64,000 nucleotides of DNA, taken from the IMG/VR virus record IMGVR_UViG_3300017991_000001, positions 147,085-211,084 of that record. One strand, written 5' to 3'. Every line of letters starts with the position of its first letter. Positions within the stretch are counted from its first letter, which is position 1. Below the pieces are notes generated by a model, which saw only the letters and a program-made list of their open reading frames with translations, ran no database searches and was not told where the DNA came from. This document shows positions 9,698-62,131 of the stretch, one piece after another. A program made the translations under genes and the position numbers.

Positions 9698-9943
9698 ATG
9701 AGAACGACCATCACTAACACTTCGGGCGCGGAAAAGACCTTCGGGTGGATTCCTCCGCACGGGCACACCTTGGCGAACGGAGCATCCGTCGTCATTGAGG
9801 GCGACCTGCGCACGATCCTGGGAGGCGGCCGTGGTCGATACTCCAGGGGTCAGGAGCTTGCGGGCCTCAACGACGCGGTCACCCGCGGCCAAGTGACGGA
9901 AGAGGAGACCGTCGGTCCGTCCAGCTCTTCGAGCAGCGCCTAA
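9698..9943 (+). CDS. small protein with FGWIPPHG domain and C-terminal poly-Ser
   Basis: GAGGAG RBS; homologous to the N-terminus of the 59643 protein; ends GPSSSSSSA. Confidence 0.7.
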   Translation: MRTTITNTSGAEKTFGWIPPHGHTLANGASVVIEGDLRTILGGGRGRYSRGQELAGLNDAVTRGQVTEEETVGPSSSSSSA

Positions 9944-11572: not shown

Positions 11573-11573
11573 G

Positions 11574-12710: not shown

Positions 12711-12719
12711 AGGAAAAAC

Positions 12720-13697: not shown

Positions 13698-13710
13698 AAG
13701 GAGACACACA

Positions 13711-37346: not shown

Positions 37347-37355
37347 GGATGAGAC

Positions 37356-38285: not shown

Positions 38286-39706
38286 CGCAGCCCGTCTTCG
38301 AGTTCTACAGTGCCAACGAGTTCCGCGAGTACCCCTTCGACACGCGGCGTGATGACGGTCTGCACGAGCTTTTCGTGGACGCTTACGTGATGCATACGGC
38401 GCACCGGGATAACGCCGGACGCCTGCGCATGGTGAGTTTCAATACGACCGGGGACCTGGAGCTGCGCTTCGAGGACGGCACGTTGCTGGGCACTCTCACA
38501 AGTGCAGACGGGTTTATTTCCAGCTCTTTTGGCCGCTATACCTTGTACGAATGGCGAAAATCAGTTACGTATGGGGCCGGGTTCACGTCAGAGGATCTTA
38601 TCGCCCGCCTAGTGACAGTCACCGAGAAGTTGAGCAGCTTCTCTTTTCCAATCTCACCGTCAGACGCCTACCTCCTCGCCTCCAGGGTGAACCCACGTCC
38701 GTTGAACGTGATCTCCACGGCTTTGGCGTTCCCAGGTTTGGCTTGTTGTCTGGGCGGCCCCAATCGCAATGCTTTGCAGATGGAATCAGGCTATAACCTT
38801 GAGCTTTCCACGCAAGCACCAGAAAGCGAAGTCGGCCTGGCCCTGGCCGAGACGCCGGAAGTGAGGGCACCGGAAGAAGTGTCCGTGTCGGCGTTGGCTG
38901 GCGCGGGCGCGGGCACCTTCCCCTTGTGCGAGGACCCCTCCGAGTTCGTGCGCTCGCTCAACGGTGTCCAGCCCAACGACGAGAAGGACTTCCGCCTCGG
39001 ACTGGTGGACTGCACCTGGGAGGAGACGCGGCTGGTGGGCGGCACCTCCTCGCCGGTCAATCCCAACACCGATTACCTGGGCTCGATCATCGATGCCACG
39101 GAGAAGATCATCCTGCAGCTGCACCAGGCCTGTCGGGCCTGCTGCGACTGCCCGGACTACGGCCGCGCCTACGACATCATCTATACGACCTGGTCGCGCG
39201 CGAAGACCGTGAACAACCGTCTCATCGAGGTGCTTGGAGACTACGAGCGCATCCTGAACGAGTACAAGGAGATCAAGGCGGACCGCGAGACCGACCTGCA
39301 GGTGAAACTGCGCCTCATCGCGACGCCCGACTACCAGGTGGCCATCGCCGTGCAGATCGGGAACAACTCCCACACGGACCTGAACCCGATGACGCTGACG
39401 GTCGACGCGAACAACGTTGCGTCGCCGACCATCTATCCCGTGTACACCGAGGGTAGCGGCTTCGTGGAGATGGAAGGTACCCACAACGCACAGAGAGACC
39501 CAGCCGGAACGCCGGGCGGTCCCTTCACGCTCGAGATGCCGGCGCTGGCGCCCGGCAAGTACGCCATCTTTCGGATGGCGGTGCGGTACACCGGCAACCT
39601 GCGCTACCAGAAGTACTCGGAGGTTTCGGCAAGGGTGGTGAACGACGAGTTTGACGAGCTGGCGGAGCGGCGCATCCTGCTTCGTGGGCCCCTGGTGAAA
39701 GAATAA
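38282..39706 (+). CDS. tail/baseplate paralogue 2
   Basis: EFYSANEFREYP; SLNGVQPNDEKD; CRACCDC; coiled coil then Ig-like C-terminus. Confidence 0.7.
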   Translation: MTQPVFEFYSANEFREYPFDTRRDDGLHELFVDAYVMHTAHRDNAGRLRMVSFNTTGDLELRFEDGTLLGTLTSADGFISSSFGRYTLYEWRKSVTYGAGFTSEDLIARLVTVTEKLSSFSFPISPSDAYLLASRVNPRPLNVISTALAFPGLACCLGGPNRNALQMESGYNLELSTQAPESEVGLALAETPEVRAPEEVSVSALAGAGAGTFPLCEDPSEFVRSLNGVQPNDEKDFRLGLVDCTWEETRLVGGTSSPVNPNTDYLGSIIDATEKIILQLHQACRACCDCPDYGRAYDIIYTTWSRAKTVNNRLIEVLGDYERILNEYKEIKADRETDLQVKLRLIATPDYQVAIAVQIGNNSHTDLNPMTLTVDANNVASPTIYPVYTEGSGFVEMEGTHNAQRDPAGTPGGPFTLEMPALAPGKYAIFRMAVRYTGNLRYQKYSEVSARVVNDEFDELAERRILLRGPLVKE

Positions 39707-41265
39707 TGCTTGTCTTTTCGGAATGGCTGAACGCGAATGAGGTCCGCCGCTACCCCCTCCATGACAGTGCGAGCGGGGAGCTGCAGGACAATATCCTCGT
39801 GGACGCCCGGCTTTGGGTGCCCAAGAGCGCGGGGCGCGTGGTCTACGTCTCTTCCGTGGGCATCACCAGCGGGCTGGTCACCCTGACCTTCCTGGCCGCG
39901 GCGGACTCCCCTTTCCTGGACGGCACCGGCACGCCGGTCTCCTTCACGCCGCTGGCGGTCGTGCGCGCCTCGCGGCCCGTGACCAGGTTCGTGAACATGG
40001 CCGTCGAGGCGCTCTACCCCGGCGTGGGTGGGTGGATCGCGCTCGGGGAAGGCGCCGTCGAGATCGAGAGCCTGAACGCCCGCTTTACCGGCCCGGCCGA
40101 GACCCAGCTCAACGAGCGCTGCGTGAACGTCTACGACGACGCGGCCGTGTCCAGCGTGGGCAAGGAAAACGTTGCCGAGGGGCTGACGGGCCTGATCACG
40201 CTCCGCGGCGAAGCCGGTGTGCTGAAGACGTTCAAGGCCACCCGTACGGTCGAAGGGGTGGACCGCGAGGTAGCCGTAGTGGCCATGGACCTGGGCGACA
40301 ACAAGGTGTCCAGGCTGCAGGACTTCTCCGGCGTGTGTGGCGGCCGGCCGCAAGCCAACACCTGCAGGAAGCGCGTGGTCGAGCGGATCAACACGGTCAC
40401 CCCGGACGACGACGGCAACATCGACCTGGTCTTCGAGGGGGACATGACGGTCGGGGACGTGCAGCGGGGGCTCATCGTGGACTTCCCCGTGGGACTGGAC
40501 GACGTGTGCCCCGAGTCGATCTCCAACGAGATCCCGTTCCCCGTACCGGGCGGCCCGCCGAGCCCGACGCCGCCCGAGCCGCCGCCGGAACCGTCCGGGT
40601 CTTCGGGCCAGTCCGACTCATCCGAGGGGCTTCCTTCGGGCTATTGCGAGGACTTCGAGGACGGCGTGGCCGAGGAGCTGGACAACTTCGTGGGCAGCTT
40701 CACAATCGAGGACGTACCCGGGCGCACCAAGCGTTACGTCAGCGCCGCCGATGACACCGGTCAGCAGCTTGCCACCAACTACCTGCGGCAGTTCAACACG
40801 GAAGAGGGTGAGACTTATACGGTCGTAAGCATCATTCGTCCGCGCAGCGTGGATGGCAAGAGTTTCCTGATCGCGGGCTTCAAGAACGACAACCTGTTCA
40901 CGTTCGCTGGCATTACGTTGGAGAACGGGGGCAGCTTCTTCGTCGGCAACAAGAGCGGCGAGACAGGCGGGTCCTTCGGTAGCGGGTACAGACCCTACCT
41001 GGAGTTCGCCCCCGAGTGGGACACGCCGCCGGACACGGATTACCAGGTAACCTTCGCCATCTACTCGAGCGACATCGCTGAGATGAAGGTGGCGTGGAAC
41101 GACGGCATCGCCGACCGGGAGCAGACACAGCTTGTGGTGCTGGCTTCCTTCCAGGAGAAGGGACGGCCCGGTCTGGGTGTGCTGAATTCGGAAACGGAGT
41201 TCGATGACTTCGGGGTCAACTGCGAAGAGTTCCCGTCGTCGTCATCGTCAAGTTCGGGGCCTTAA
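39706..41265 (+). CDS. tail/baseplate paralogue 3 with C-terminal beta domain and poly-Ser
   Basis: EWLNANEVRRYP; RINTVTPDDDGN; Pro/Ser linker; ends [10 protein letters not shown]. Confidence 0.7.
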   Translation: MLVFSEWLNANEVRRYPLHDSASGELQDNILVDARLWVPKSAGRVVYVSSVGITSGLVTLTFLAAADSPFLDGTGTPVSFTPLAVVRASRPVTRFVNMAVEALYPGVGGWIALGEGAVEIESLNARFTGPAETQLNERCVNVYDDAAVSSVGKENVAEGLTGLITLRGEAGVLKTFKATRTVEGVDREVAVVAMDLGDNKVSRLQDFSGVCGGRPQANTCRKRVVERINTVTPDDDGNIDLVFEGDMTVGDVQRGLIVDFPVGLDDVCPESISNEIPFPVPGGPPSPTPPEPPPEPSGSSGQSDSSEGLPSGYCEDFEDGVAEELDNFVGSFTIEDVPGRTKRYVSAADDTGQQLATNYLRQFNTEEGETYTVVSIIRPRSVDGKSFLIAGFKNDNLFTFAGITLENGGSFFVGNKSGETGGSFGSGYRPYLEFAPEWDTPPDTDYQVTFAIYSSDIAEMKVAWNDGIADREQTQLVVLASFQEKGRPGLGVLNSETEFDDFGVNCEEFPSSSSSSSGP

Positions 41266-42948: not shown

Positions 42949-44769
42949 ATGGCCAGAGCTTTTCCAGAGCGCTCGGAGTGCCCGGAAGTTCCCGATAACG
43001 ACGCGATCGGGACGCTGAACCTCAATGACCCGTCGGAGCCGGCGGACCGCATCATCCAGACGCGGTTCTTCACGTTCCCTCCACCGGAACCGCCCAACTT
43101 TGACTTCGGCTGCTACGGCCCCACCGCGACCGTAAGCGTGTCCGAGGCCTCGTCGGCGGCCGGCGAGGTCGACATCGAGTACCCGAACGAGGACGAGACG
43201 GGGCGCTGTGAGCCACGCTTCAACTTCGACTTCTCCGTGCCGCCCTGTGTGACGGCCAGCACCGAGGCCTCCATTCAGGTCAGTTCGGAACTGGCGGACC
43301 CGGCGGTGGAGTTCGAGGCCTCCCGCAAGACCGGCGACCCTTGTGCCTGGGACTTCCGCTTCAACCTGAACCTGCCCGGTTTCTGCCCGACGGTGCGCAC
43401 GGACGCCTCCATCTCCATCAACGCCTCGCTTTCCGACCCGACGGTGGAGTTCGTCGGCGAGCGCGACCCGCTGGAACCGTGCCGTTTCAACTTCGACCTG
43501 GACATCCAGCTGCCGGAGTTCGGAGAGGATGACGTCTGTCAGGCCAGGTTGGCCACCACGGGCAACATTTCCCTGTCGGGCCTGCAGACCGTAGACGGCG
43601 TCGCGGCCAGCGAGGACGACGTGATCCTGGTGCGGGCGCAGTCGACGGGCAGCCAGAACGGCGCCTACCGCATGAAGTCCGGCGCCTGGGAGCGGACTTG
43701 CGACATGTCCCGGGCCGGCATCATCGTAACGGTGCGGGAGGGTGCGGAGTACGCGGGCACGGCGTGGTTGTTGAGCACCAACGACCCCATCTCGGTGGGT
43801 TCAACGCCGCTGACCTTCACCCTGATAAGCGGATCGACCTGCTGCTGTTCAGCCAGGGTCGCCACGCTCGAGGACATCACGCTCAGCGGGTTGCAGACGA
43901 TCGACGGCGTCTCGGTGGCCGAGGACGACATCGTGCTGGTGAAGAACCAGGGCTCCGAGTCGGAGAACGGCCCCTACCTGGTCAAGGATGGGGCGGCGTG
44001 GGAGCGCACCTGCGAGGTCTTCTCCGGGCACACCGTGTCTGTCCGGGAGGGCACGTACCAGAAGCAGACGGTTTGGATGCTGACCACCGACGGCGCGATC
44101 GAGTTGGATACGACGGGGCTCACTTACCGCCAGGTGGTCGACCGCCCAATGTGCCGGGTGGCCTCCGGCGGCCACACAATACGCTCAACCACCCGCACGA
44201 TCGACGGCGTCGCCACGTCCGTCGACGACATCGTCCTGCTCATGAACCAGAACAACCCGGCACAGAACGGCCTTTACCTGGTCAAGAGCGGGAGCTGGGT
44301 GCGCACCGGCGACATCACGCCGGGCATGATCATCACCGTGCAGGAAGGGGCTGTGTACGGCGGGCAGTCCATCGTCCTGTCCACGGCGGACCCGATCACG
44401 GTGGGTACCACGAACCTGACCTTCTCGCCATTGCGCATGGTCGTGCGGGCTTACGTTGCGCTGGACAAGGGGCCGTTCGGGCAACCCGCTCAGGGGTTGA
44501 CGGGCACGCCCGACATCGACGATATAACCACGCAGGCCGGCGACGTCGTCCTGGTCTTCAATTCCAGTACGCCGGCGAACAACGGTGTTTGGGTCGTGCC
44601 GGGTACGGGGGCCTGGCAAGAGGCAATGCCCGGCACCACGGGCTTTGCCGGTACAATCGTCTCCGTGCGGGAAGGGAACAGGTTCGGACAGGTTTCCTTC
44701 ATGATTCTGGGCGGGGCAGACCGGGATATTTGGGGCATCACCGGCGTGGTGGGCCCGAACACAATTTGA
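42949..44769 (+). CDS. fibre-like virion protein with tandem repeats
   Basis: Four ~100-aa copies of R.AT..I.LSGLQTIDGV....D.VLV.NQ....NG.Y, a module common in phage fibre proteins; three N-terminal C..F.F...P repeats. Confidence 0.7.
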   Translation: MARAFPERSECPEVPDNDAIGTLNLNDPSEPADRIIQTRFFTFPPPEPPNFDFGCYGPTATVSVSEASSAAGEVDIEYPNEDETGRCEPRFNFDFSVPPCVTASTEASIQVSSELADPAVEFEASRKTGDPCAWDFRFNLNLPGFCPTVRTDASISINASLSDPTVEFVGERDPLEPCRFNFDLDIQLPEFGEDDVCQARLATTGNISLSGLQTVDGVAASEDDVILVRAQSTGSQNGAYRMKSGAWERTCDMSRAGIIVTVREGAEYAGTAWLLSTNDPISVGSTPLTFTLISGSTCCCSARVATLEDITLSGLQTIDGVSVAEDDIVLVKNQGSESENGPYLVKDGAAWERTCEVFSGHTVSVREGTYQKQTVWMLTTDGAIELDTTGLTYRQVVDRPMCRVASGGHTIRSTTRTIDGVATSVDDIVLLMNQNNPAQNGLYLVKSGSWVRTGDITPGMIITVQEGAVYGGQSIVLSTADPITVGTTNLTFSPLRMVVRAYVALDKGPFGQPAQGLTGTPDIDDITTQAGDVVLVFNSSTPANNGVWVVPGTGAWQEAMPGTTGFAGTIVSVREGNRFGQVSFMILGGADRDIWGITGVVGPNTI

Positions 44770-44776
44770 GGTTTAT

Positions 44777-46792
44777 ATGTCACTGGTCATATGGCGACCC
44801 TACGAGACGGAAGGCGACACTGATTGGCCGGCAGAACTGCGCGGCGGCGGCGAGGACTGGTGGCCGCGCCGTCACTTCGACGTGGAGAACATCATCGGGC
44901 GTCACGATATTTACTCCGATCCCCCGACGTGCATAGAGATGGCTTCGGAACACTCGAAGGGCCTTAACCAGATCATCGCCGTTATGAAGTACATGGTCTA
45001 CGCGTACGACCTCCACCTTTTTACCCCTACGCCTGACTATGTGGACGTGGACGAGTTTCAACAGGTCGGGTTTTCCAAGCGGTTCCCGGAACGAAATTTG
45101 TGGGACGACATCAAGCGCGACATAAACAACCTGCGAAGTGTCATAGGTGTTCCCGCTTTTTCATGGACGCTGCCTTACATCCGCCAGGTCCCCTTTATCC
45201 CGGGCGACGAACGGAAGTCGATGATCGGGAAGAACAAGATCAGCTTCGTCGATCTGACCGAGTTCAGACAAGCGTTGACCGAAGACGTGTATACGGCAGT
45301 CACGTTGCCGGAGTACTTTCAAGCAAAACCGTCTCAAGCCTACGTGAGAGAGTTTCAGGAGAAGTACCCGTCGGACATCACTGGCTATTTTTGGACGGCG
45401 GGTATGCGCATGCACATGAATCAGTATACGGGGTGTGGTGCGAGCGGTACGAGTGACCTGACAACGCTGGATAACTACTTTGACTGGTACTTCGACAAGC
45501 GACCCAACCACCACTACCCGGACCCTCCAGTGCACATTTCTCCGACAAAAGTGATCTTGTATTTGGAAGGTGAACGCAGCGAGCTTACTTGGAGCAGAGG
45601 CCCGGGGTGTCCTTCTTGTTCAGGTGACCATTATATTTATACCGGACAAAGAGGCATTTTCATGTTTAAGATTCCCCCCACGGCCGGGACATTGCCCATC
45701 ACCAAGATCACGTTGTACGGAACAACGGCAGGAGCTATAGCGGGTGTGGATGACAACGTGAGCTTCTGGATGCCTACGGAGGAATTTCTGAACGACGGGA
45801 TGGAAGACCCCGGCGCGTATGGCTCGCCGCTTGACAACATGTATCCTTTCGGCTTCGGTGGAGGTTTCAGACGCGTGCTTTGGAGACCGGCTACGCCGCA
45901 GTCTTTTCCCATGCTCGGAGGAAACAGTTCTTATCAGGAGTACACATGGGGCGGCGGTGCGGGCGGCGGTTTGGGCACGACAATGGTACAAGCCGTATCC
46001 TGGGTGAATGATCCCCTCCCCACTTATGACGGGATACGTTTCAATACGCTCGGCCACGTCCTCTATGTAGGCGGCACGAAGGTATGCGATTTCAGGAACT
46101 CAGCGTGCGTAACGCCTCCAGACCCATGCCTGGAATGTAGCCTCGGCGCAGGGGTCCTTCTTCTGGGCCAGGACGATCCCCGTGAGAACGGGTACTGGAG
46201 GGTCACAATGAGTGACCCCGACGGCAAAGGGTTGAAGCTGAATGTGACAAAACGCGGAAACCTTTGTCCGTACGCTTACTACCCTTCGGACATCGGTATT
46301 GCCTGTGAAGACGCTCAATTCATGTTTGCGACGTATCCCGACGACGGCGGAAGAGCCGGGTCGGTGTGGACGATAACGTCAGACCCCGTTGAATGTTCTT
46401 CGCTGTCGTCGGACGCGTCGGACTGTTCGGAGACCAGCGCGCAGAGTATTTCTTCCTCTACACCCTTTTCGTCGTCGTCGTCGTTCGGTTCCTGCGGAGG
46501 ACCCTTGAGGTTGCGCAAGATGACGGACTACGAACTCAGATACAGGAAGATTGCCACTTTACCGGATTGGGGCATTAAGCTGGGAACACACGACATGAGC
46601 GTGTACGATCATGGAGATCCGTTTGAAATTGAGCTGACAAACATCCCGGACTACGTGCGGGACGCGTGCCATGACTACTGGATGGTTGTTTCGCTTGATA
46701 AGGAGGTTGCGCGGACGGGCGTCTTTGACGAAGCGCTGTCGCTGCTTCTGTCTCGCTTGGAATTCGAGTTCGGTTCATCGTCGTCAGCCTAG
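44777..46792 (+). CDS. variable, lower-GC virion protein (possible receptor-binding/fibre tip)
   Basis: Weaker codon bias; degenerate VLLLGQDDPRENGYW fibre motif; Cys- and Ser-rich; ends GSSSSA. Confidence 0.55.
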   Translation: MSLVIWRPYETEGDTDWPAELRGGGEDWWPRRHFDVENIIGRHDIYSDPPTCIEMASEHSKGLNQIIAVMKYMVYAYDLHLFTPTPDYVDVDEFQQVGFSKRFPERNLWDDIKRDINNLRSVIGVPAFSWTLPYIRQVPFIPGDERKSMIGKNKISFVDLTEFRQALTEDVYTAVTLPEYFQAKPSQAYVREFQEKYPSDITGYFWTAGMRMHMNQYTGCGASGTSDLTTLDNYFDWYFDKRPNHHYPDPPVHISPTKVILYLEGERSELTWSRGPGCPSCSGDHYIYTGQRGIFMFKIPPTAGTLPITKITLYGTTAGAIAGVDDNVSFWMPTEEFLNDGMEDPGAYGSPLDNMYPFGFGGGFRRVLWRPATPQSFPMLGGNSSYQEYTWGGGAGGGLGTTMVQAVSWVNDPLPTYDGIRFNTLGHVLYVGGTKVCDFRNSACVTPPDPCLECSLGAGVLLLGQDDPRENGYWRVTMSDPDGKGLKLNVTKRGNLCPYAYYPSDIGIACEDAQFMFATYPDDGGRAGSVWTITSDPVECSSLSSDASDCSETSAQSISSSTPFSSSSSFGSCGGPLRLRKMTDYELRYRKIATLPDWGIKLGTHDMSVYDHGDPFEIELTNIPDYVRDACHDYWMVVSLDKEVARTGVFDEALSLLLSRLEFEFGSSSSA

Positions 46793-46802
46793 AGGCGCGC
46801 TC

Positions 46803-47198
46803 ATGCTGCATCTACCTTTCAAGCTGTCGCCAACGGGCAGGGCGGAGCGTCCCAAGATCAACCGGCCCGCGCCTGCGCCCGCGCCTGCGCCCGCGCCTGC
46901 GCCCGCTCCCGTAATAGAACCCGAGGAAAACGTGTCGCACATGATAACGGACGACAACGTGTTGGACTTGCTGGACAACCAGCGCGTACTGTCGTTTCTT
47001 CCACACCTGGGTCCTGCCTTTAGCGGGTGGAAACCCAAGAAACCTTGCCCGCGAGAAGAGGAGCGCAGGGAGTACGCCAAGGTGCTCCGGCGCATGCTTC
47101 GCCACATGAAGCCGAAGCGCAGACGCCTGCTCAAGAAGGCTCTGCGTGTGAGGCGGCTGACGTTCAGTCTTGAAGGCGGTCCCGCGGAAACAATTTGA
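46803..47198 (+). CDS. small basic protein with (PA)n linker; paralogue family A
   Basis: GAGG RBS, ATG 46803; ITDDNVLDLLDN..V...PHL. Confidence 0.6.
   Translation: MLHLPFKLSPTGRAERPKINRPAPAPAPAPAPAPAPVIEPEENVSHMITDDNVLDLLDNQRVLSFLPHLGPAFSGWKPKKPCPREEERREYAKVLRRMLRHMKPKRRRLLKKALRVRRLTFSLEGGPAETI
46866..46910 (+). repeat. 12-bp tandem repeat CCCGCGCCTGCG x3+ encoding PAPA
   Basis: Directly visible in the sequence. Confidence 0.85.
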
Positions 47199-47254
47199 TC
47201 TTCCGCCATTCATCAGTATATTCGATACCCCTTAAGAACTTCGCGGAGAAAACC

Positions 47255-49054
47255 ATGCGCGTATTCGTCCTGGGCATCCCCCACACGCAGACCACGATCG
47301 AGTTCACGACCTGTGCCTACACCATGAAGGTGTGGAACCTCTGCCGCATGCTGCACCGCCGCGGCCACGAGGTCATCCACATGGGCACGGAAGGGTCCAA
47401 CCCGGACTGCACGACCCACGTGTCGGTCACGCCGCTGGAGATGTGGGAGGAGCTGTACGGCCATCCGGGTGCGGGCTTCTACCAGACCAGCGCCGACGGG
47501 AAGTTCGCCCCGTACCACAACATCTACGAGCAGAACGTCCGCAGCGAGCTGTTGCAACGCGGAGGCGACCCCAACACCTCGATCGTCTGCGTGCCGTGGG
47601 GCGGCGCCCAGTTCAGGGCGCTGGAGGGCGTGCCGCAGCTGGCCTGCGAGAGCGGCATCGGCTACCACATCACCCAGCTGCAGAACCGGGTCTTCGAGTC
47701 CTACGCCTGGCTTCACTTCCACTGGGGCCGCGAGAACAAGCACGACGGCAAGGGCTGGTTCGATGCCGTGATCCCCAACGCCTTCGACCCCGAGATGTTT
47801 CCCTTCTCGCCCAAGGACAAGCGCAAGGACTACTTCCTCTTCATCGGCCGGCTGAACTGGGACAAGGGCGTGCCCATCGCCGTGGACGTGACCAAGCGCA
47901 TTGGCGCCAAGCTGAAGATCGTCGGCCCCGGCAGCCCCGAGCAGTGGGTCAAGGACAACCCGCACGTGGAGTACCTGCCGCCGGTGGGCGTGGAGGATCG
48001 CAAGAAGCTCATGGGCGAGGCCATCGCCACGTTCGTGCCCACCCAGTACCTGGAGCCCTTCGGCGGCGTCAACGTCGAGGCCCAGATGACGGGCTGTCCG
48101 GTGATCACCACGGACTGGGGCGCCTTCCCCGAGACGGTGCTCCATGGCATCACGGGCTACCGCTGCCGCTCCATCGAGCAGTTCGTGTGGGCCGCGAAGA
48201 ACATCGACCAGCTCGACCCGGCCAGCTGCCGGCAGTGGGCGCTGGCCAACTACTCGCTGGACCGCATCGCGCCCATGTACGAGGAGTACCTGCAGATGGT
48301 GCTCAATCGCAGGGGCCAGGGCTTCTACCAGGAGTTCCCGGAGCGCAAGCAGCTGATGTGGATGACCAAGGCCTTCCCGGCGGCGGCCACCGCGCAGCCG
48401 GCCATCCCGAAGGAGCACGTGGCCCCCAAGATCGACACGGCCTGGGAGCACGCGATCAAGTGGGAGGCGGAGTGGTGGGGCAACGAGCCCAACGAGCGCT
48501 GGGCGGCCGAGGTGGACAAGCAGAAGACCTACGCCCGCCTGATGGGCCTGCCGTACGACCTGGACATGGGCAAGAAGAACATCCTGGACGTGGGCTGCGG
48601 CCCGACCAGCATGCTGCTCAGGGCCAAGCACGGCGGCAAGTCGGTGGGCGTCGATCCGCTCCCCGTCTCCAAGAAGACAAAGGCCCGCTACAAGGACGCC
48701 AAGGTTAGGCTGTTCACCGTCAAGGGCGAGGACCTGTTCAACCCGGGCAACGGCACCAACACCCTGCGCGGCGCCACCTTCGACGAGGTCTGGATGTACA
48801 ACTGCCTGCAGCACTGCGACCAGCCGGCGATCATCCTCTCGCGCATCGCGCTGGCGGGGAAGGTCATCCGCATCTTCGAGTGGCTCAACATGGGCGTGGC
48901 TCCGGGCCACCCTCACAACCTGACGGAGAAGCTGTTTGAACTCTTCCGTAACCCGGAAATGTGGGTACAACATATCTGGAACACCGGCGTGCTGCGGGAC
49001 TTCGGCGGCACCGTGAACAACAATTACCTGGCCATCCACGTGGAGCGCAAGTGA
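47255..49054 (+). CDS. GT-B (GT4-like) glycosyltransferase fused to a SAM-dependent methyltransferase
   Basis: LFIGRLNWDKG, EPFGGVNVEAQMTGCPVITTDWGAFPETV; C-terminal ILDVGCGP and FDEVWMYNCLQH. Confidence 0.9.
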   Translation: MRVFVLGIPHTQTTIEFTTCAYTMKVWNLCRMLHRRGHEVIHMGTEGSNPDCTTHVSVTPLEMWEELYGHPGAGFYQTSADGKFAPYHNIYEQNVRSELLQRGGDPNTSIVCVPWGGAQFRALEGVPQLACESGIGYHITQLQNRVFESYAWLHFHWGRENKHDGKGWFDAVIPNAFDPEMFPFSPKDKRKDYFLFIGRLNWDKGVPIAVDVTKRIGAKLKIVGPGSPEQWVKDNPHVEYLPPVGVEDRKKLMGEAIATFVPTQYLEPFGGVNVEAQMTGCPVITTDWGAFPETVLHGITGYRCRSIEQFVWAAKNIDQLDPASCRQWALANYSLDRIAPMYEEYLQMVLNRRGQGFYQEFPERKQLMWMTKAFPAAATAQPAIPKEHVAPKIDTAWEHAIKWEAEWWGNEPNERWAAEVDKQKTYARLMGLPYDLDMGKKNILDVGCGPTSMLLRAKHGGKSVGVDPLPVSKKTKARYKDAKVRLFTVKGEDLFNPGNGTNTLRGATFDEVWMYNCLQHCDQPAIILSRIALAGKVIRIFEWLNMGVAPGHPHNLTEKLFELFRNPEMWVQHIWNTGVLRDFGGTVNNNYLAIHVERK

Positions 49055-49512
49055 GCGTCGTCGCACACATCATGGAAGAGGTGGAGCCGGGCCTGTATGC
49101 AGACTCCGCGAACCACCTGAAGATCGTGCGAGCCGTGCTGTCCAGGGCCAGCTACCGCCCCCGCAGCCACGGTGTCGAGCACTGCCCGCCCGACGTGGTG
49201 GAGTACTACCGCACGCAGACCAACATGCGTTACCCCTACAGGGCCGCGTTCACGGACAGCTTCACGAACCGCGTGCGCCGGTTGCCGGGCGACATCGTTG
49301 TGGCGACCGAACCGTGGCACCGGGAGTGCTTCAAGGGACTCCTGCGTAACGGCGCGTGGGACGGGATGCATGTCATTGAACTGCTACGCCAGGAGGGAGA
49401 GGACGCTCCGATCGCGACCGCCCGGATGACCCTGGCGCTGTCGGAGCTGAACAGATGCCCGAACCGGTTTGCATCAAAAATACGCAGAGTCCTGGAGACT
49501 ACATTGTCCTGA
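49051..49512 (+). CDS. hypothetical protein
   Basis: GTGA overlap with the upstream stop; codon bias; overlaps the next gene by ~58 bp. Confidence 0.5.
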   Translation: MSVVAHIMEEVEPGLYADSANHLKIVRAVLSRASYRPRSHGVEHCPPDVVEYYRTQTNMRYPYRAAFTDSFTNRVRRLPGDIVVATEPWHRECFKGLLRNGAWDGMHVIELLRQEGEDAPIATARMTLALSELNRCPNRFASKIRRVLETTLS

Positions 49513-51206
49513 CGGCGGCACTGCGGGACATCACGCTGTGCTACCCGGGCGTCTTCCAGTTCACCGCGGCCACGCCGGAGCCGGACATCTGGCGCAACAA
49601 CCCGCTGGTGAAGCACGGGGATAAGCGCGGCATCAGGCGCATCGTGGCCAGGTACTCCTCGCCCAACAACCCCTACCGCATCCACAAGTCCAACCAGGCC
49701 CGCGCCCACTTCATGTGGTCCTTCCTGGCCGACCTCAACCTGATGCTGAAGACCCACGCCGTGCTGACGGACTTTCGTCCGGCACTGTACCTGACCGAGG
49801 AGGAGAAGGCCACGCCCCTGCTCCAGACGGACAAGCCGTACTGGGTGATGGTGGCCGGCGGCAAGCGGGACTTCACGGCGAAGTGGTGGGACAAGGACCG
49901 CTGGCAGCAGGTGGTCGACCGCGTCAAGGACAGGGTGACGGTCGTACAGGTGGGCGGAGGCAGCCACATCCACCCAAGACTCACGGGTGTGCATGACCTG
50001 GTGGCCAAGACCTCCTTCCGCGAGCTGATGCGGCTGATCTACCACAGCCACGGGGTCTTCTGCATCGTGACCTGCCTGATGCACATCGCCGCGGCCTTCA
50101 ACAAGCCCTGCGTGACGGTGGCCGGCGGCCGGGAGCCGTGGTGGTGGGAGGCGTACAACGAGGAGAACCGCCTGGCCAACATGCGGATCGGCCGGGCGGA
50201 CTGGAAGCCGCCCGAGCCCGACACGTTCATCCCGCACCGGTACATCTACCTGGAGTGCGACAAACCCAAGTGGAGTGGCGGGCGGGGGTGTTGGAAGAGC
50301 AAGCTGGAGGGTGGGAACAAGTGTGAGGATATCGTGGCCACGCAGACGGGTCTCAGGCTCCCGCACTGCCTGGACAAGATCACGGCCGAAAGGGTGGTCA
50401 AGGAGTTCGAGTGGTACTACGAGAACGAGATCCTGTCGCTGGACAAGAAACTGATCCTGCCTCCCATTATCCCCGCCATTCCTTCAAGCAACGCCTATCC
50501 GACCCCACAGGCGTACGTGCCGAGCAAGTCGAAAGCCAAAGTACCCAAGGGCAGGGCGCAACCCACGCCCCTCTGGCATGATGTGGCCAAGCCGGCACCC
50601 GAACCGAACCTGGACAAGACCCACCTGTTCGTATACCTGGGCGGCCAGACCAGGCTGGACTACCTGAACCAGATACGGGAGCGTTCCCCCCGCGCGGCGC
50701 TCACGGCTGTCTGCAACACCGCCTCCGGCGAAGTGGACAACTGGTGCAAACACAACGCGGCCGAGGCCGTCATGGACGGGGCCGAACCGGGGCGCCCGGA
50801 GATGCTCTACCGCGCGCTCTCCGACGCCAAGCGCGAGCAGCTCGTGTGGATCGAGTACCCCGTCATGCCGCGTGCCGGCCACTGGGGCAGGTACCTTACG
50901 CCGTTCCCCGATAAGTCCTTCGGCGGCTGCTTCTACTGGCAGCGCATAACCGACGGGCATGAGCAGCTGATGAAGTCATCTCCGTGGGCAAAGGGTTGGA
51001 ACCCCCGGCAGCATGGCACGGAAGGCTTCGCCACCATGGTCTTTCCGCTGCGCGGGTACTTGGTGCTTCCGCGAAGCCTGGTCGGTCGTATAGAATGGGC
51101 GTGCAGGCACGTGCCCGACGCGGCGTTCGAGCTGGTGCTGGGCGCGCTGCTGAGCCAGTGGCAGACACCTCTGTTGGACTTGGGCCATACGGTGGAACAC
51201 CAATGA
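49455..51206 (+). CDS. GT9-like (heptosyltransferase-type) glycosyltransferase with an extra C-terminal domain
   Basis: SPGDYIVLTAAL, AKWW..DRW, DLVAKTSFRELMRLI, MHIAAAFNKPCV motifs. Confidence 0.8.
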   Translation: MPEPVCIKNTQSPGDYIVLTAALRDITLCYPGVFQFTAATPEPDIWRNNPLVKHGDKRGIRRIVARYSSPNNPYRIHKSNQARAHFMWSFLADLNLMLKTHAVLTDFRPALYLTEEEKATPLLQTDKPYWVMVAGGKRDFTAKWWDKDRWQQVVDRVKDRVTVVQVGGGSHIHPRLTGVHDLVAKTSFRELMRLIYHSHGVFCIVTCLMHIAAAFNKPCVTVAGGREPWWWEAYNEENRLANMRIGRADWKPPEPDTFIPHRYIYLECDKPKWSGGRGCWKSKLEGGNKCEDIVATQTGLRLPHCLDKITAERVVKEFEWYYENEILSLDKKLILPPIIPAIPSSNAYPTPQAYVPSKSKAKVPKGRAQPTPLWHDVAKPAPEPNLDKTHLFVYLGGQTRLDYLNQIRERSPRAALTAVCNTASGEVDNWCKHNAAEAVMDGAEPGRPEMLYRALSDAKREQLVWIEYPVMPRAGHWGRYLTPFPDKSFGGCFYWQRITDGHEQLMKSSPWAKGWNPRQHGTEGFATMVFPLRGYLVLPRSLVGRIEWACRHVPDAAFELVLGALLSQWQTPLLDLGHTVEHQ

Positions 51207-51532
51207 CCGTACTCGAACTGGACGACGAGAAGATCTTCAAGCTCGCGGGCGACCCGGCCGTCTACGCGGCGGCGCCGTTCCTGGAGCCCATGAAGAACGC
51301 TGCACTTTCCGCCGCGGCTAAGTACCGCAGCTGCAAGAAGTGTCAGAAGCCCGCCTATATCAAGACGGCCAAGGCCGTGGGCGGGGCCTTCGTGCGTCTC
51401 ACGCTGGACGCCGACCCGTCCCTGTACCCGCCCCTGAAGGCGATCATCTTCAAGATCCTGAACGTCCACCATGCCGACCAGGTGATGATGAACTACACCA
51501 AGGACGGGCAGCAGCACCAGTTGACCTTCTGA
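51203..51532 (+). CDS. small CxxC protein; paralogue family A
   Basis: ATGA overlap; LDDEKIFKLAGDPAV...PFL; SCKKC. Confidence 0.65.
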   Translation: MTVLELDDEKIFKLAGDPAVYAAAPFLEPMKNAALSAAAKYRSCKKCQKPAYIKTAKAVGGAFVRLTLDADPSLYPPLKAIIFKILNVHHADQVMMNYTKDGQQHQLTF

Positions 51533-51554
51533 ACATGGGACCTACAATGCTGCC

Positions 51555-52040
51555 ATGACGACCGTGCCGACCGAGTTCTATACGGGTGACAGCAGCCGCT
51601 ACATCAAATTGCAGCGGGAGGGCATGACCACCTACGTGAGCGGCCGCACGCAGGGCTTCCGCGTGCGGATCACGGCCATCGAATCCAACGAGATGCCGCT
51701 GGAGATCTTCGTCTACCAGCACCTCCCCTTCCCCGACAGCGAGACCGGGTACCAGGACCGTTTCGTCAACATTGCCAGCCCCAACGACATCGAGGAGTAT
51801 AATGTGGGTGAGGTGGGGGATTCCACGCGCCCCTTCTTCCGGCTGGCCGCGATCGACCTGGTCTTCCGCAACGATGACATGCTCGAGGAGGCGGTCCAGA
51901 AGATCTACGACGAGATCGGCCAGCTCGTGGAGAGCCTCAACTACATGGACGACCTCGAAGTGCAGGAGGAAGTGACCATTGGGACACCGCCAACTAGTTC
52001 CTCCTCCTCGTCCTCCGATTCAAGCTCGAGCTCGTCCTAA
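51555..52040 (+). CDS. hypothetical acidic protein with C-terminal poly-Ser
   Basis: Ends PPTSSSSSSSDSSSSSS. Confidence 0.75.
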   Translation: MTTVPTEFYTGDSSRYIKLQREGMTTYVSGRTQGFRVRITAIESNEMPLEIFVYQHLPFPDSETGYQDRFVNIASPNDIEEYNVGEVGDSTRPFFRLAAIDLVFRNDDMLEEAVQKIYDEIGQLVESLNYMDDLEVQEEVTIGTPPTSSSSSSSDSSSSSS

Positions 52041-52116
52041 CACGCCCCCCAAGCCGTTTGACCGCACCGTACGCTCGCGTCCGCCGCCCCCGGCCAGGGC
52101 TCCGCGGCGCAAGAGC

Positions 52117-52404
52117 ATGACGCTGGGCAACGACCAGCTGATCAACCTGCTCAGGAACGCCGCCGTCATCACCGCCATCCCCAGGCTGCGCGGCCTGCTC
52201 AAGAACCTGCCGCAAGGCGGGTGCCGCTGCGCCAAGAAGAGCGCCGCGGCACACAACCGCAGGGAGGCGATCAACCGCGTCAAGGAAACCCTCCAGACCC
52301 TCTCGCCCGACGAGCGCGCGGCGCTGCTGCGGGCCATGCAGACGGACGAGATCTTCTTCTACGTGAGCGCCGGCAACGGTTCCGTCGAGCGCCGCAGCAT
52401 CTAA
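52117..52404 (+). CDS. small Cys-containing protein; paralogue family A
   Basis: LGNDQLINLLRNAAV...PRL; GCRC; start uncertain. Confidence 0.6.
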   Translation: MTLGNDQLINLLRNAAVITAIPRLRGLLKNLPQGGCRCAKKSAAAHNRREAINRVKETLQTLSPDERAALLRAMQTDEIFFYVSAGNGSVERRSI

Positions 52405-52416
52405 AGACAACCTCCC

Positions 52417-52429
52417 GGCGCGTTACTAT
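52417..52429 (+). promoter_or_regulatory. candidate promoter motif GGCGCGTTACTAT
   Basis: Second copy of the 28607 motif; contains TACTAT (-10-like). Confidence 0.4.
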
Positions 52430-52556
52430 TCCATGTGACCCGAGTTGGCCATTCGGCCAGTTTTGGCTCATGTCAGTTCCGCGCGCATTGGGCGCAGGGA
52501 GGTGACTTATGTAGCGGCGCTACGTTCCGGGTAGCTCCCGGAGAAAGGACAGAAGC

Positions 52557-53334: not shown

Positions 53335-53365
53335 GGCCGCCGGGGAAACCCGGCGGCCTTCTTTT
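53335..53365 (+). terminator. Rho-independent terminator
   Basis: GGCCGCCGGG-GAAA-CCCGGCGGCC followed by TTCTTTT. Confidence 0.85.
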
Positions 53366-60902: not shown

Positions 60903-60905
60903 CCA

Positions 60906-62120
<1,215 letters not shown>

Positions 62121-62131
62121 GGTTCACATGA

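What the first reader, a model, noticed from the sequence alone, without database searches (positions are those of the whole stretch)
46803..52404. Glycosyltransferase cluster co-transcribed with the tail genes
Seen: directly after the fibre genes, with no evident terminator, come a GT4-like glycosyltransferase fused to a SAM methyltransferase, a GT9-like enzyme with an additional C-terminal domain, and a poly-Ser protein. Inference: a late-expressed pathway building a methyl-capped glycan on virion proteins. Host surface conversion or DNA modification are alternatives, but the late structural context favours the virion.
Basis: partly seen in the sequence, partly recalled or inferred. Interest (0 to 1): 0.7.

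Follow-up and report, generated by a model that had tools for sequence, protein, structure and literature searches.

The report
Phage glycosylation genes beside serine-tailed protein
A 211-kb marine phage carries, inside its tail-fibre gene block, three sugar-adding enzyme domains plus a methyl-adding domain next to a small protein ending in a run of serines, which most likely sugar-coat the virus particle's own proteins, though no experiment yet shows this.

Summary
Window 46803-52404 holds a GT4 glycosyltransferase fused to a SAM methyltransferase (47255-49054), a GT9-like enzyme (49455-51206) and a 161-aa protein ending in poly-Ser (51555-52040). The extra C-terminal domain of the GT9 protein is a GT-A fold (model pLDDT 94), so the cluster has three glycosyltransferase domains and one methyltransferase.

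It lies in the fibre module of a complete 211-kb phage with terminal repeats. The first strong terminator downstream is at 53335-53358.

The order GT9, then a ~110-aa protein, then a poly-Ser-tailed protein recurs in nine related phage genomes (GC 46-67%). The poly-Ser tail is kept in 24 of 25 homologues. All seven proteins of this genome with runs of five or more Ser are encoded in the last 64 kb.

The GT4 orthologue lies next to collagen-like fibre genes in two unrelated cyanophage lineages. No enzymes that make DNA-sugar acceptors, no sugar-nucleotide epimerase and no integrase were found.

Best reading: O-glycosylation of virion proteins, confidence about 0.5. Expression timing, glycan and acceptor remain untested. 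Modification of the host envelope is the main rival. This would be a new variant of a known kind.

The parts
42949..44769 (+). 606-aa protein with repeated Ig-like modules (fibre or decoration type). Conserved upstream neighbour of the cluster.
   Evidence: PHROG tail fibre 3e-65 and head decoration 5e-57, each with 3-4 repeated stretches. Homologues hold the same position in L002, L004, L006 and L007.
44777..46792 (+). 671-aa fibre or receptor-binding-like protein. The N-terminal ~175 aa are conserved and the rest is swapped. It has a Ser-rich internal stretch and ends ...GSSSSA. Candidate acceptor.
   Evidence: Only residues 2-177 match the counterparts in L002 and L004. GC3 is about 0.66 against about 0.9 in neighbouring genes. 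Sequence. The counterpart in L004 has four poly-Ser runs.
46803..47198 (+). 131-aa small basic ORF with a (Pro-Ala)8 repeat. Absent from relatives. Weakly resembles the 95-aa family.
   Evidence: Translation. hhalign against A6 gives E 3.5e-4, probability 37%. L004 has only a 62-nt gap at this position. Contigs break at the repeat 46868-46904.
47255..48400 (+). GT4 (GT-B, retaining type) glycosyltransferase domain of the fusion protein.
   Evidence: Pfam PF00534 2.5e-16 and PF13692 1.4e-15. phrog_3408 2e-85. Solved relatives are 7FG9/8X3Q at 3e-26 and the tetrahydrobiopterin glucosyltransferase BGluT at 1e-11 to 5e-9. 7FG9 is a UDP-Glc alpha-1,2-glucosyltransferase (PMC9909042). EX7E motif read.
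48440..49054 (+). Class I SAM-dependent methyltransferase domain fused to the GT4 domain.
   Evidence: Pfam Methyltransf_11 5e-05 (24.3 bits, cut-off 21.2), with Methyltransf_12 and _25 below their cut-offs. phrog_3603 7e-25. No informative solved relative. It is a separate gene (gp017) beside the GT in phage ACG-2014f.
49072..49512 (+). 146-aa conserved protein. It matches the N-terminal part of 256-264-aa proteins of relatives, whose C-terminal part is GT1-like.
   Evidence: GC3 0.86-0.90 in this frame. 54% identity to the 151-aa protein of L004; partial matches to L006 7460-8254 and L002 8792-9562. Faint Glyco_trans_1_4 hit on the L002 protein. The 58-nt overlap with the GT9 gene is conserved in L004.
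49455..50459 (+). GT9-like GT-B domain (residues 1-335), with a conserved Cys cluster at residues 268-305 (50256-50369).
   Evidence: Pfam PF01075 7.5e-14. Weak matches to WaaC, WaaF and WaaQ only. Asp15, Lys137, Lys143, Cys279, Cys290 and Cys305 are invariant or nearly so in 33 homologues. The fourth Cys is at 273/274 in 29 of 33 and at 268 in this protein and 3 others.
50619..51206 (+). GT-A-fold domain (residues 389-583) fused to the GT9 domain by a Pro-rich linker.
   Evidence: AlphaFold2 model from alignment A3, pLDDT 94, pTM 0.90. Foldseek PDB hits at E about 3e-6, probability 1.0, to ppGalNAc-transferases, ABO transferases, PcManGT and SpsA. VIA Z 12-14 to GT-A enzymes. Conserved acidic positions E467, E559 and D575; no DxD motif.
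51203..51532 (+). 109-aa protein with a CxxC motif. Its start overlaps the GT9 stop (ATGA). Conserved partner of the GT9 gene.
   Evidence: Start and stop read. Homologues directly follow the GT9 gene in L002, L004, L006, L007, L011, L015 and L016. Alignment A5.
51555..52040 (+). 161-aa protein: beta-rich core, a long helix, then a C-terminal poly-Ser tail (residues 147-161, nt 51993-52037). Prime candidate acceptor.
   Evidence: Poly-Ser tail of variable length in 24 of 25 homologues. Model pLDDT 78 with a disordered tail. No fold match. The tail uses mixed AGC/AGT/TCN codons.
52117..52404 (+). 95-aa protein with a CxC motif. Distant paralogue of the 109-aa protein.
   Evidence: hhalign A5 against A6: E 2.8e-5, probability 74%, 86 columns. 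Homologues in L004, L006 and L008.
53335..53358 (+). First strong intrinsic-terminator-like hairpin downstream of the fibre genes. Probable end of the transcription unit.
   Evidence: Stem of 10 G-C pairs followed by TTCTTTT. Fold energy -27.8 kcal/mol, z -3.0.
59643..63178 (+). Three collagen-like fibre proteins whose Gly-X-Y repeats have Thr at Y. The first also has a 12-Ser linker. Candidate acceptors.
   Evidence: Pfam Collagen 6e-38, 2e-24 and 6e-06; PHROG tail fibre families. Y position is Thr in 62 of 78, 33 of 54 and 13 of 17 triplets.
35466..41265 (+). Fibre or baseplate-region proteins carrying poly-Ser: 35466-37346 has a 13-Ser interdomain linker and 39706-41265 has a 7-Ser C-terminal tail.
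   Evidence: The homologue of 39706-41265 in L011 has four poly-Ser runs at GC 0.50.
10044..10967 (+). 307-aa head-region protein with a 10-Ser and a 6-Ser run near the N-terminus ([18 protein letters not shown]).
   Evidence: It lies 1.3 kb after the weak major-head-protein match at 7786-8751.

Best explanation
The cluster is a virion-protein O-glycosylation module of a large lytic marine phage. It is probably transcribed with the fibre genes. It supplies three glycosyltransferase domains (a GT9-like GT-B fused to a GT-A, and a GT4) and a SAM methyltransferase fused to the GT4. These would act in the infected cell's cytoplasm, using host sugar nucleotides.

Proposed scheme, which is inferred and not shown:
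- The GT9-like domain primes serine hydroxyls in homopolymeric Ser tails and linkers. The precedent is the WaaC-like enzyme TibC, which heptosylates Ser residues of proteins.
- The fused GT-A domain and the GT4 domain extend the glycan. The nearest solved relative of the GT4 adds alpha-glucose to a sugar acceptor.
- The methyltransferase caps it.

Likely acceptors are the adjacent 161-aa poly-Ser-tailed protein, the poly-Ser stretches of at least six other proteins encoded in the last 64 kb, and possibly the Thr-rich collagen-like fibres.

Shown: domain identities, gene order, conservation of the gene order, and the restriction of poly-Ser runs to this region. Inferred: late timing, protein acceptor, order of the steps, sugar identity, and the target of methylation.
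For: Domain calls: Pfam and PHROG, solved relatives, GT-A model and fold searches.

Context: the record is a complete 211-kb phage with a 123-bp terminal repeat. A baseplate wedge homologue lies at 28998-30647. Fibre-like genes lie on both sides. The GT9 stop overlaps the next start. The first strong terminator is at 53335.

Conservation: the order GT9, ~110-aa protein, poly-Ser-tailed ~150-aa protein occurs in this genome and in L002, L004, L006, L007, L011, L015 and L016. In L012 the GT9 gene is followed directly by the poly-Ser-tail gene. L015 and L016 were found through an unrelated anchor protein.

Poly-Ser: the tail is kept in 24 of 25 homologues although its length varies. It persists across GC 0.46-0.67 and is encoded by mixed codons. 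Seven of 62 genes in the last 64 kb have runs of five or more Ser, against 0 of 193 elsewhere (Fisher p = 3.8e-5). Nine runs were seen where shuffling predicts 0.055.

GT4 orthologue elsewhere: it lies directly after a collagen-like 'tail fiber protein' in S-CBWM1. In ACG-2014f it lies between a collagen-repeat protein, the methyltransferase homologue, a 2OG-Fe(II) oxygenase and a tail fibre gene.

Precedents: phage-encoded glycosyltransferases glycosylate capsid and tail tube proteins of mycobacteriophages (PMC12363180, PMC12619734). PBCV-1 A064R is a GT-GT-methyltransferase protein that builds the methylated end of the capsid glycan (PMC9614988). TibC is a WaaC-like enzyme that heptosylates Ser of proteins (PMC4358343).

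Against the alternatives: no ThyA-like enzyme, C5 DNA methylase, integrase, sugar-nucleotide epimerase or further GT was found in the genome.
Against: - There is no direct evidence of any glycan, of expression timing, or of which proteins are in the virion.
- GT9 and GT4 are the classic LPS-core families, and GT9 members that act on proteins are the exception. TibC was not retrieved by the profile search.
- The 161-aa protein has no recognisable structural-protein fold. It may not be a virion component.
- Poly-Ser stretches may be nothing more than flexible linkers.
- GT4-methyltransferase is present in only 5 of 9 related loci, so it is accessory.
- The GT-A domain lacks a canonical DxD motif.
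- Gly-X-Thr collagen repeats are common in phage fibres whether or not a glycosyltransferase is present.
- The methyltransferase substrate is unknown.
- The host is unknown, so donor availability, for example ADP-heptose, cannot be judged.
Confidence: 0.5

Rival explanations
1. Host envelope modification. The GT9-like and GT4 enzymes act at the inner face of the host membrane on LPS core or another surface glycolipid or polysaccharide during infection. This would block superinfection or stop progeny from adsorbing to debris. The methyltransferase would decorate that glycan. The position beside the fibre genes would then reflect co-evolution with receptor recognition rather than virion modification.
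For: The best named matches of the GT9 domain are the LPS heptosyltransferases WaaC, WaaQ and WaaF. GT4 matches include LPS and teichuronic-acid enzymes. The cyanophage literature reads such genes as cell-wall synthesis and modification genes (PMC12801897). Source annotations read 'glycosyltransferase involved in cell wall biosynthesis'.
Against: All NCBIfam LPS equivalog scores are far below their cut-offs, for example 35 against 185 bits. No integrase was found, so there is no sign of lysogeny. The tight, conserved link to a poly-Ser-tailed protein and the restriction of poly-Ser to the last 64 kb would be unexplained. The position suggests a late operon, and changing the envelope shortly before lysis has little obvious benefit.
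Confidence: 0.2
2. DNA hypermodification. The enzymes build a methylated glycan on a modified base of the phage DNA, protecting it from restriction.
For: Phage glycosyltransferases often glycosylate DNA. A GT4-like enzyme whose best structural matches are also 7FG9 and 8X3Q is proposed to extend a DNA-linked glycan in Rhizobium phage RL38J1 (PMC13326640).
Against: The genome has no thymidylate-synthase-like hydroxylase or hydroxymethylase and no C5 DNA methyltransferase. The TET/JBP search was negative, but its control did not ring either. The cluster lies among fibre genes, not among nucleotide-metabolism genes. In three lineages the GT4 orthologue lies beside fibre genes.
Confidence: 0.06
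3. Synthesis of a soluble glycoside, or an unrelated metabolic role. The GT4-methyltransferase would make a small methylated glycoside, and the poly-Ser stretches would be plain flexible linkers with no tie to the enzymes.
For: The nearest solved relatives of the GT4 domain act on small soluble acceptors: sucrose for 7FG9 and tetrahydrobiopterin for BGluT. Ser-rich linkers occur in many modular proteins without glycosylation (general knowledge).
Against: Three glycosyltransferase domains and a methyltransferase embedded in a fibre module are hard to fit to a small-molecule role, as is the conserved adjacency of the GT9 gene to the poly-Ser-tail gene. The phage has no other sugar-metabolism genes.
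Confidence: 0.1

Closest known systems
Virion glycosylation in mycobacteriophages (Che8, Corndog, Myrna; Freeman et al. 2023, as cited in PMC12363180 and PMC12619734)
   Same: Phage-encoded glycosyltransferases are proposed or shown to glycosylate the phage's own structural proteins, with glycans at C-terminal ends of the subunits. The genes belong to the phage, not the host.
   Different: There the acceptors are capsid and tail-tube subunits of actinobacteriophages, and the glycans were shown experimentally. Here the phage is a 211-kb marine phage of unknown host. The enzymes are a GT9-like/GT-A fusion and a GT4-methyltransferase fusion. The proposed acceptors are homopolymeric Ser stretches and perhaps collagen-like fibres. 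Nothing has been shown experimentally. Homology to Che8 gp110 or Corndog gp38 was not tested.
Chlorovirus PBCV-1 A064R (GT-A + GT + methyltransferase; PMC9614988)
   Same: One viral polypeptide joins glycosyltransferase and SAM-methyltransferase domains. There the methyltransferase O-methylates the terminal sugar of the capsid glycan. This is the best precedent for a methyl-capped glycan on a virion.
   Different: A064R belongs to a eukaryotic virus, builds an N-linked glycan and has a different domain order and different families. No sequence relationship was tested.
TibC/AAH bacterial autotransporter heptosyltransferases (PMC4358343)
   Same: A WaaC-like GT-B enzyme that works in the cytoplasm and modifies Ser, not Thr, residues of a protein many times over. 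It carries a four-Cys metal finger after the C-lobe. The phage GT9 domain has a conserved Cys cluster in the equivalent place.
   Different: TibC was not retrieved by the profile search of solved structures. The Cys spacing differs: C-x2-C-x15-C-x11-C in TibC, against CC-x4-C-x10-C-x14-C in 29 of 33 homologues (here Cys268 takes the place of the CC). The N-terminal beta-barrel and the dodecamer were not tested. The phage enzyme also carries a fused GT-A domain.
LPS core heptosyltransferases WaaC, WaaF and WaaQ (GT9)
   Same: Same Pfam family. The catalytic Asp near the N-terminus and the Lys aligned with WaaC Lys192 are conserved.
   Different: Scores are far below every equivalog cut-off. The N-lobe is shorter. 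There is an extra Cys cluster and a GT-A domain. The gene lies in a phage fibre module.
GT4 genes of cyanophages: S-CBWM1 gp122, and ACG-2014f / S-CAM7 gp018 with gp017 (phrog_3408)
   Same: These are the closest annotated relatives, at 32-43% identity. They also lie in tail-fibre and collagen-like gene clusters. ACG-2014f has the methyltransferase homologue as a neighbouring gene.
   Different: In those phages the GT and the methyltransferase are separate genes, or the methyltransferase is absent. They have no GT9 or poly-Ser partner. ACG-2014f adds a 2OG-Fe(II) oxygenase, which this genome lacks. Their function is also unknown.
Glycosylation of collagen-like and Ser-rich surface proteins: mimivirus L230 (PMC9614988); Bacillus BclA and the GtfA/GtfB enzymes acting on serine-rich repeat proteins (from my own knowledge, not checked here)
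   Same: Repetitive Gly-X-Thr or Ser-rich stretches of surface fibres are glycosylated in the cytoplasm by dedicated enzymes. GtfA is a GT4 enzyme.
   Different: No homology was tested, and these systems occur in different organisms. Homopolymeric Ser as an acceptor is not, to my knowledge, described for phages.

Membership tests
GT4 / Pfam Glycos_transf_1 (retaining GT-B) | Match to the family profile above the curated cut-off | tested here: met
   PF00534 60.1 bits (cut-off 26.4); PF13692 58.2 bits (cut-off 27).
GT4 / Pfam Glycos_transf_1 (retaining GT-B) | EX7E motif in the C-terminal Rossmann domain | tested here: met
   EPFGGVNVE read in the translation. That this motif defines the family is from my own knowledge.
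GT4 / Pfam Glycos_transf_1 (retaining GT-B) | Sequence relationship to a solved, characterised GT4 enzyme | tested here: met
   7FG9 (glucosylsucrose synthase, UDP-Glc) at 2.9e-26 over residues 169-350.
Class I SAM-dependent methyltransferase | Profile match above cut-off, and the Gly-rich SAM motif I | tested here: met
   Methyltransf_11 24.3 bits (cut-off 21.2); Methyltransf_12, _25 and _23 are below their cut-offs. Motif LDVGCGPTS read.
Sugar O-methyltransferase (the 'methyl cap' claim) | Relationship to a characterised sugar O-methyltransferase, or shown activity on a sugar | tested here: inconclusive
   No solved relative below E 0.06. NCBIfam gives only a weak hit to an uncharacterised methyltransferase family. 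Fusion to a glycosyltransferase is the only pointer.
GT9 (Pfam Glyco_transf_9) | Match to the family profile above the curated cut-off | tested here: met
   PF01075 52.1 bits (cut-off 22), residues 53-239. All 120 listed homologues carry PF01075.
LPS heptosyltransferase I/II/III (WaaC, WaaF, WaaQ equivalogs) | Score above the NCBIfam equivalog cut-off | tested here: not met
   Best is TIGR02193 at 35.4 bits against a cut-off of 185.3; the others are lower.
LPS heptosyltransferase I/II/III (WaaC, WaaF, WaaQ equivalogs) | ADP-heptose as donor and lipid A-Kdo as acceptor | not testable with these tools
   Needs an enzyme assay.
BAHT protein heptosyltransferases (TibC/AAH) | Detectable sequence relationship to TibC | tested here: not met
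   The profile of 33 homologues retrieved only WaaC and WaaF from the solved structures at E up to 10.
BAHT protein heptosyltransferases (TibC/AAH) | Four-Cys metal finger inserted after the C-lobe | tested here: inconclusive
   Cys279, Cys290 and Cys305 are invariant. A fourth Cys lies at 273/274 in 29 of 33 homologues, or at 268. The spacing differs from TibC. Metal binding was not tested.
GT-A fold glycosyltransferase | GT-A fold | tested here: met
   Model pLDDT 94. Foldseek probability 1.0 to many GT-A enzymes. VIA Z 12-14 over 160-180 residues.
GT-A fold glycosyltransferase | DxD metal-binding motif after strand beta-4 | tested here: not met
   That position reads W-x-E, acidic in 27 of 33 homologues, with no second Asp. 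Some GT-A families lack DxD (my own knowledge), so activity is not excluded.
GT2 (Pfam Glycos_transf_2) | Profile match | tested here: not met
   No PF00535 hit on the protein or anywhere in the genome. Some homologues carry PF00535 in place of this domain.
Phage virion glycosylation system | Glycan covalently attached to virion proteins and dependent on the phage glycosyltransferases | not testable with these tools
   Needs virions, or co-expression with mass spectrometry.
Phage virion glycosylation system | Expression together with the structural (late) genes | tested here: inconclusive
   Same strand, tight junctions, no strong terminator before 53335. No RNA run was listed.
Phage DNA glycosylation (hypermodification) system | An enzyme that makes the hydroxylated or hydroxymethylated pyrimidine acceptor | tested here: not met
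   No PF00303 and no PF00145 in the complete genome. PF12851 was negative, but its control did not ring.

The most novel reading that the evidence does not exclude
A widespread lineage of marine phages, with contigs of about 140-210 kb, coats its virion proteins with a mucin-like layer. A conserved bifunctional GT9-like/GT-A enzyme would O-glycosylate homopolymeric serine tails and linkers. In part of the lineage a GT4-methyltransferase would extend and methyl-cap the glycan. This would be the first virion glycosylation system outside actinobacteriophages. It would also add a new acceptor type (poly-Ser) and a second GT9-type enzyme that acts on proteins.
Probability: 0.3. Interest if true: 0.75.

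Novelty: new variant of a known kind. Interest (0 to 1): 0.55.

Why it matters
Glycosylation of phage particles has been shown so far only for some mycobacteriophages, where it changes antibody recognition. If this cluster does the same, virion glycosylation extends to large environmental phages. Homologues are numerous: more than 400 for the GT9 protein and thousands for the GT4 fusion.

It would also offer a simple sequence mark, poly-Ser stretches in virion proteins, for predicting acceptors. Sugar coats on fibres could affect host recognition, protease resistance, sticking to particles in sediment and seawater, and grazing.

The prediction can be tested without culturing the phage, by co-expressing the 161-aa protein with the enzymes. 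If instead the enzymes remodel the host envelope, the cluster is an ordinary accessory-gene set.

Tried and rejected
- Megablast of the region against phage records: no match.
- tblastn of the GT9 protein against phages: no match.
- Single-sequence searches of viral contigs with the GT9 protein and with the 898-aa protein: nothing.
- PHROG searches of 20 upstream structural proteins: only a baseplate wedge match and weak hits to a major head protein family and a family of unknown function. The lineage is very divergent.
- Pfam, NCBIfam and PHROG on the small ORFs and the 161-aa protein: nothing useful.
- Fold searches of the 161-aa model against PDB, viral models and VIA-wide: best E 0.08 and best Z 5.6, which is noise level.
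- ESM Atlas searches for the 161-aa and 109-aa proteins: no usable lead.
- Complex prediction of the GT9 protein with the 161-aa protein: no answer (score 0.00). This counts neither for nor against binding.
- RNA runs: none was listed, so timing could not be tested.
- Sigma-70 promoter scan: at chance level, 3 found against 2.5 expected, so the sites at 47195 and 51521 are not evidence.
- Cyanophage hypothesis: no psbA-type gene.
- Host search with the CRISPR repeat in species-representative genomes: no match in either of two scans. The host remains unknown.
- Alternative genetic code: considered because of an amber-suppressor tRNA, then rejected for this region. TAG ends 56 of 255 predicted genes, and every gene of the cluster ends in TGA or TAA.
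- 'Moraphage' lineage (PMC12619734): considered, but that paper describes phages with predicted Bacteroidota hosts and gives no link to this genome.

Full report
**What the window is.** The window is the last 64 kb of a 211,084-bp IMG/VR virus record (G000:C1:147085-211084). The record has a 123-bp direct terminal repeat, is rated complete, and has GC 0.627. Nearly all genes are on the + strand with GC3 near 0.9. The phage is very divergent. Of 20 large upstream proteins, PHROGs recognised only a baseplate wedge subunit (28998-30647, 7e-20), a weak major head protein match (7786-8751) and a weak match to a family of unknown function (3529-4989). Near-identical DNA occurs in sediment (2018) and seawater (2021) metagenomes. 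The host is unknown.

**Checking the observation.** The region 46803-52404 holds seven + strand genes, identified by frame-specific GC3 and by conservation.
- 46803-47198: a 131-aa basic ORF with a Pro-Ala repeat. Relatives lack it.
- 47255-49054: a 599-aa fusion. Pfam Glycos_transf_1 gives 2.5e-16 and Glyco_trans_1_4 gives 1.4e-15. Methyltransf_11 passes its cut-off. PHROG 3408 'glycosyltransferase' gives 2e-85 and phrog_3603 gives 7e-25. The EX7E motif and SAM motif I are readable.
- 49072-49512: a conserved 146-aa protein that overlaps the next gene by 58 nt. The same overlap occurs in relative L004.
- 49455-51206: a 583-aa protein with Pfam Glyco_transf_9 (7.5e-14) on residues 53-239.
- 51203-51532: a 109-aa protein whose ATG overlaps the GT9 stop codon as ATGA.
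- 51555-52040: a 161-aa protein ending TSSSSSSSDSSSSSS.
- 52117-52404: a 95-aa protein.

No strong + strand terminator lies between the fibre gene stop (46792) and the hairpin at 53335-53358, which has 10 G-C pairs, a T-run and z -3.0. Contigs from independent runs cover 46877-50600 without a single difference.

**The extra domain of the GT9 protein.** More than 400 homologues exist. The N-terminal ~335 residues are well conserved. Asp15, Lys137, Lys143 and many His, Arg and Glu residues are invariant or nearly so. A Cys cluster is also conserved: Cys279, Cys290 and Cys305 are invariant. A fourth Cys lies at 273/274 in 29 of 33 homologues. In this protein and three others it lies instead at 268, which looks like a compensating move of a metal ligand.

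After a Pro-rich linker the C-terminal part varies between homologues, and some carry a Pfam GT2 domain there. I modelled residues 370-583 from an alignment of 33 homologues. The model has pLDDT 94 and pTM 0.90. Foldseek matches GT-A enzymes at probability 1.0: polypeptide GalNAc-transferases, ABO transferases, PcManGT and SpsA. VIA-align gives Z 12-14 to many GT-A enzymes. It lacks a canonical DxD; the equivalent position reads W-x-E. Three acidic positions are conserved: 467, 559 and 575.

**Relatives of the other enzymes.** The nearest solved relative of the GT4 domain is 7FG9 (3e-26). This is a cyanobacterial UDP-glucose alpha-1,2-glucosyltransferase that acts on sucrose. Next comes a tetrahydrobiopterin glucosyltransferase. 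That suggests an enzyme that extends a sugar or acts on a small acceptor, rather than a priming enzyme. The methyltransferase has no informative relative, so 'sugar O-methylation' rests only on the fusion. The GT9 domain matches WaaC, WaaF and WaaQ weakly and far below the equivalog cut-offs. It belongs to the Pfam family but is not an LPS heptosyltransferase orthologue.

**Gene order in relatives.** I examined loci from eight related phage genomes, with GC 0.46 to 0.67 and GT9 identity 39-68%.
- L002, L004, L006, L007 and L011 show the order GT9, ~110-aa protein, ~140-160-aa poly-Ser-tailed protein.
- In L012 the GT9 gene is followed directly by the poly-Ser-tail gene.
- L015 and L016 have the same order as the first group. 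They were fetched through an independent anchor, the conserved 898-aa protein at 56946-59642.
- The GT4-methyltransferase gene is present in five of the nine genomes, counting this one, so it is accessory.

Of 25 homologues of the 161-aa protein, 24 end in a poly-Ser tail of variable length after a conserved 'G-T-P-P'-like junction. The fibre-like protein just upstream is conserved only in its first ~175 residues. In this genome it has a GC3 of 0.66, as expected for a swapped receptor-binding part. Its counterparts also carry poly-Ser runs: four in L004 at GC 0.46.

**Poly-Ser runs are a feature of the virion-gene region.** I used a heuristic gene set of 255 genes. Seven of the 62 genes in the last 64 kb have runs of five or more Ser. 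None of the 193 genes elsewhere does (Fisher p = 3.8e-5). Nine runs were observed where shuffling within each protein predicts 0.055. The runs use mixed AGC/AGT/TCN codons, so selection acts on the protein and not on a DNA repeat. They sit as interdomain linkers (35466-37346, 59643-60902, 10044-10967) or as C-terminal tails (39706-41265, 51555-52040, 9698-9943).

**The GT4 orthologue in other phages.** In the phage collection the GT4 domain finds only cyanophages.
- In S-CBWM1 the orthologue gp122 directly follows gp121. gp121 is a collagen-like 'tail fiber protein' with Thr-rich Gly-X-Y repeats.
- In the T4-like ACG-2014f the order is collagen-repeat protein gp015, gp016, methyltransferase homologue gp017, glycosyltransferase gp018, 2OG-Fe(II) oxygenase gp019, then tail fibre gp021.
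- In this genome three collagen-like fibre proteins with Thr at the Y position lie at 59643-63178.

Three unrelated lineages therefore place this enzyme among fibre genes. This fits fibre glycosylation, and the oxygenase recalls the mimivirus collagen hydroxylase-glucosyltransferase L230 (PMC9614988).

**Alternatives.**
- DNA glycosylation: the complete genome has no thymidylate-synthase-like hydroxylase and no C5 DNA methylase. The TET/JBP search was negative, but its control did not ring. A GT4-like enzyme with the same best structural matches is proposed to extend a DNA glycan in Rhizobium phage RL38J1, but that pathway needs a ThyA-like enzyme (PMC13326640).
- Lysogenic conversion: no integrase.
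- The phage has no other GT1 or GT2 match and no sugar-nucleotide epimerase, so it must use host donors.
- Envelope modification remains the main rival, because GT9 and GT4 are LPS-core families and cyanophage papers read such genes that way (PMC12801897).

**Mechanism proposed.** I favour cytoplasmic O-glycosylation of virion proteins, at about 0.5. The GT9-like domain would prime Ser, by analogy with TibC, a WaaC-like enzyme that heptosylates Ser but not Thr of proteins and has a four-Cys finger (PMC4358343). The GT-A and GT4 domains would extend the glycan, and the methyltransferase would cap it, as in PBCV-1 A064R. A refinement suggested by the distribution is that GT9/GT-A pairs with poly-Ser, while GT4-methyltransferase pairs with collagen-like fibres. 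All of this is inference. The 161-aa protein has no recognisable fold and is not shown to be in the virion. The complex prediction gave no answer. No RNA data exist.

**Novelty and verdict.** Phage-encoded virion glycosylation is known in mycobacteriophages. Glycosyltransferase-methyltransferase fusions that build virion glycans are known in chloroviruses. The enzyme combination here, the conserved pairing of the GT9 gene with a poly-Ser-tailed protein, and the lineage itself are not described in anything I could find. I rate the finding a new variant of a known kind, with interest 0.55.

Noticed in passing
outside the window: G000:C1:4385-6078 (locus L013): Two CRISPR-like arrays in the phage genome, with 19 and 7 copies of the 29-nt repeat GTCGCACCCACGCGTATAGGGAAGATTGG separated by 32-nt spacers (61-nt period). 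No Cas1 or Cas7e was found in the genome, and the neighbouring ORFs have no Pfam match. The repeat was not found in species-representative prokaryote genomes.
   Followed up: partly
outside the window: G000:C1:35106-35180, 104426-104790, 51330-52796 and 108678-110120: ARAGORN calls a tRNA with anticodon CTA (amber suppressor) and a tmRNA. TAG is still a normal stop in 56 of 255 predicted genes. However, two TAG-terminated genes are followed in frame by long stretches that look coding (273 and 184 codons, GC3 0.87 and 0.86). This may be programmed read-through.
   Followed up: partly
outside the window: G000:C1:6859-7614 (- strand); relative L007:10904-11656: A sulfotransferase-domain protein (PF00685, 2.5e-13) is encoded near the terminase gene. 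In relative L007 an FGE-sulfatase-family gene directly follows the poly-Ser-tail gene. Either could point to further modification, such as sulfation of a glycan or protein.
   Followed up: no
window 59643-63178: Three tandem collagen-like fibre genes with almost pure Gly-Val/Ala-Thr triplets. Their C-terminal globular parts are related to one another (shared '...[13 protein letters not shown]...' stretch in the first two).
   Followed up: partly
window 9698-9943 and 59643-60902: An 81-aa protein ending GPSSSSSSA shares an N-terminal 'FGWIPPHG' module with the first collagen-like fibre protein. It may be a small paralogue or an adaptor of that fibre.
   Followed up: no
window 51203-51532, 52117-52404, 46941-47195: The two small Cys-motif proteins that flank the poly-Ser gene are distant paralogues (hhalign E 2.8e-5). 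The ORF after the swapped fibre gene weakly resembles the second one (E 3.5e-4). Their function is unknown; they could be chaperones or specificity factors for the enzymes.
   Followed up: partly
window 44777-47198: The distal two thirds of the fibre gene and the following small ORF have much lower GC3 (about 0.66) than their neighbours, and no counterpart in relatives. This looks like a recently exchanged host-range cassette. The CCNGCN repeat at 46868-46904 breaks contigs in all four runs examined.
   Followed up: partly
window 11573-13700: GC falls to 0.49-0.58 here, the lowest in the window. My GC3-based gene caller left 11573-12719 uncalled, although an ORF (11511-12710) exists. This may be a foreign or atypical gene in the head region.
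   Followed up: no
loci L004/L005 (GC 0.46) compared with the window (GC 0.63) and L016 (GC 0.67): Relatives share 64-80% protein identity across the fibre and glycosyltransferase module yet differ by about 17 points in GC. This implies fast compositional drift or very different hosts within one phage lineage.
   Followed up: no
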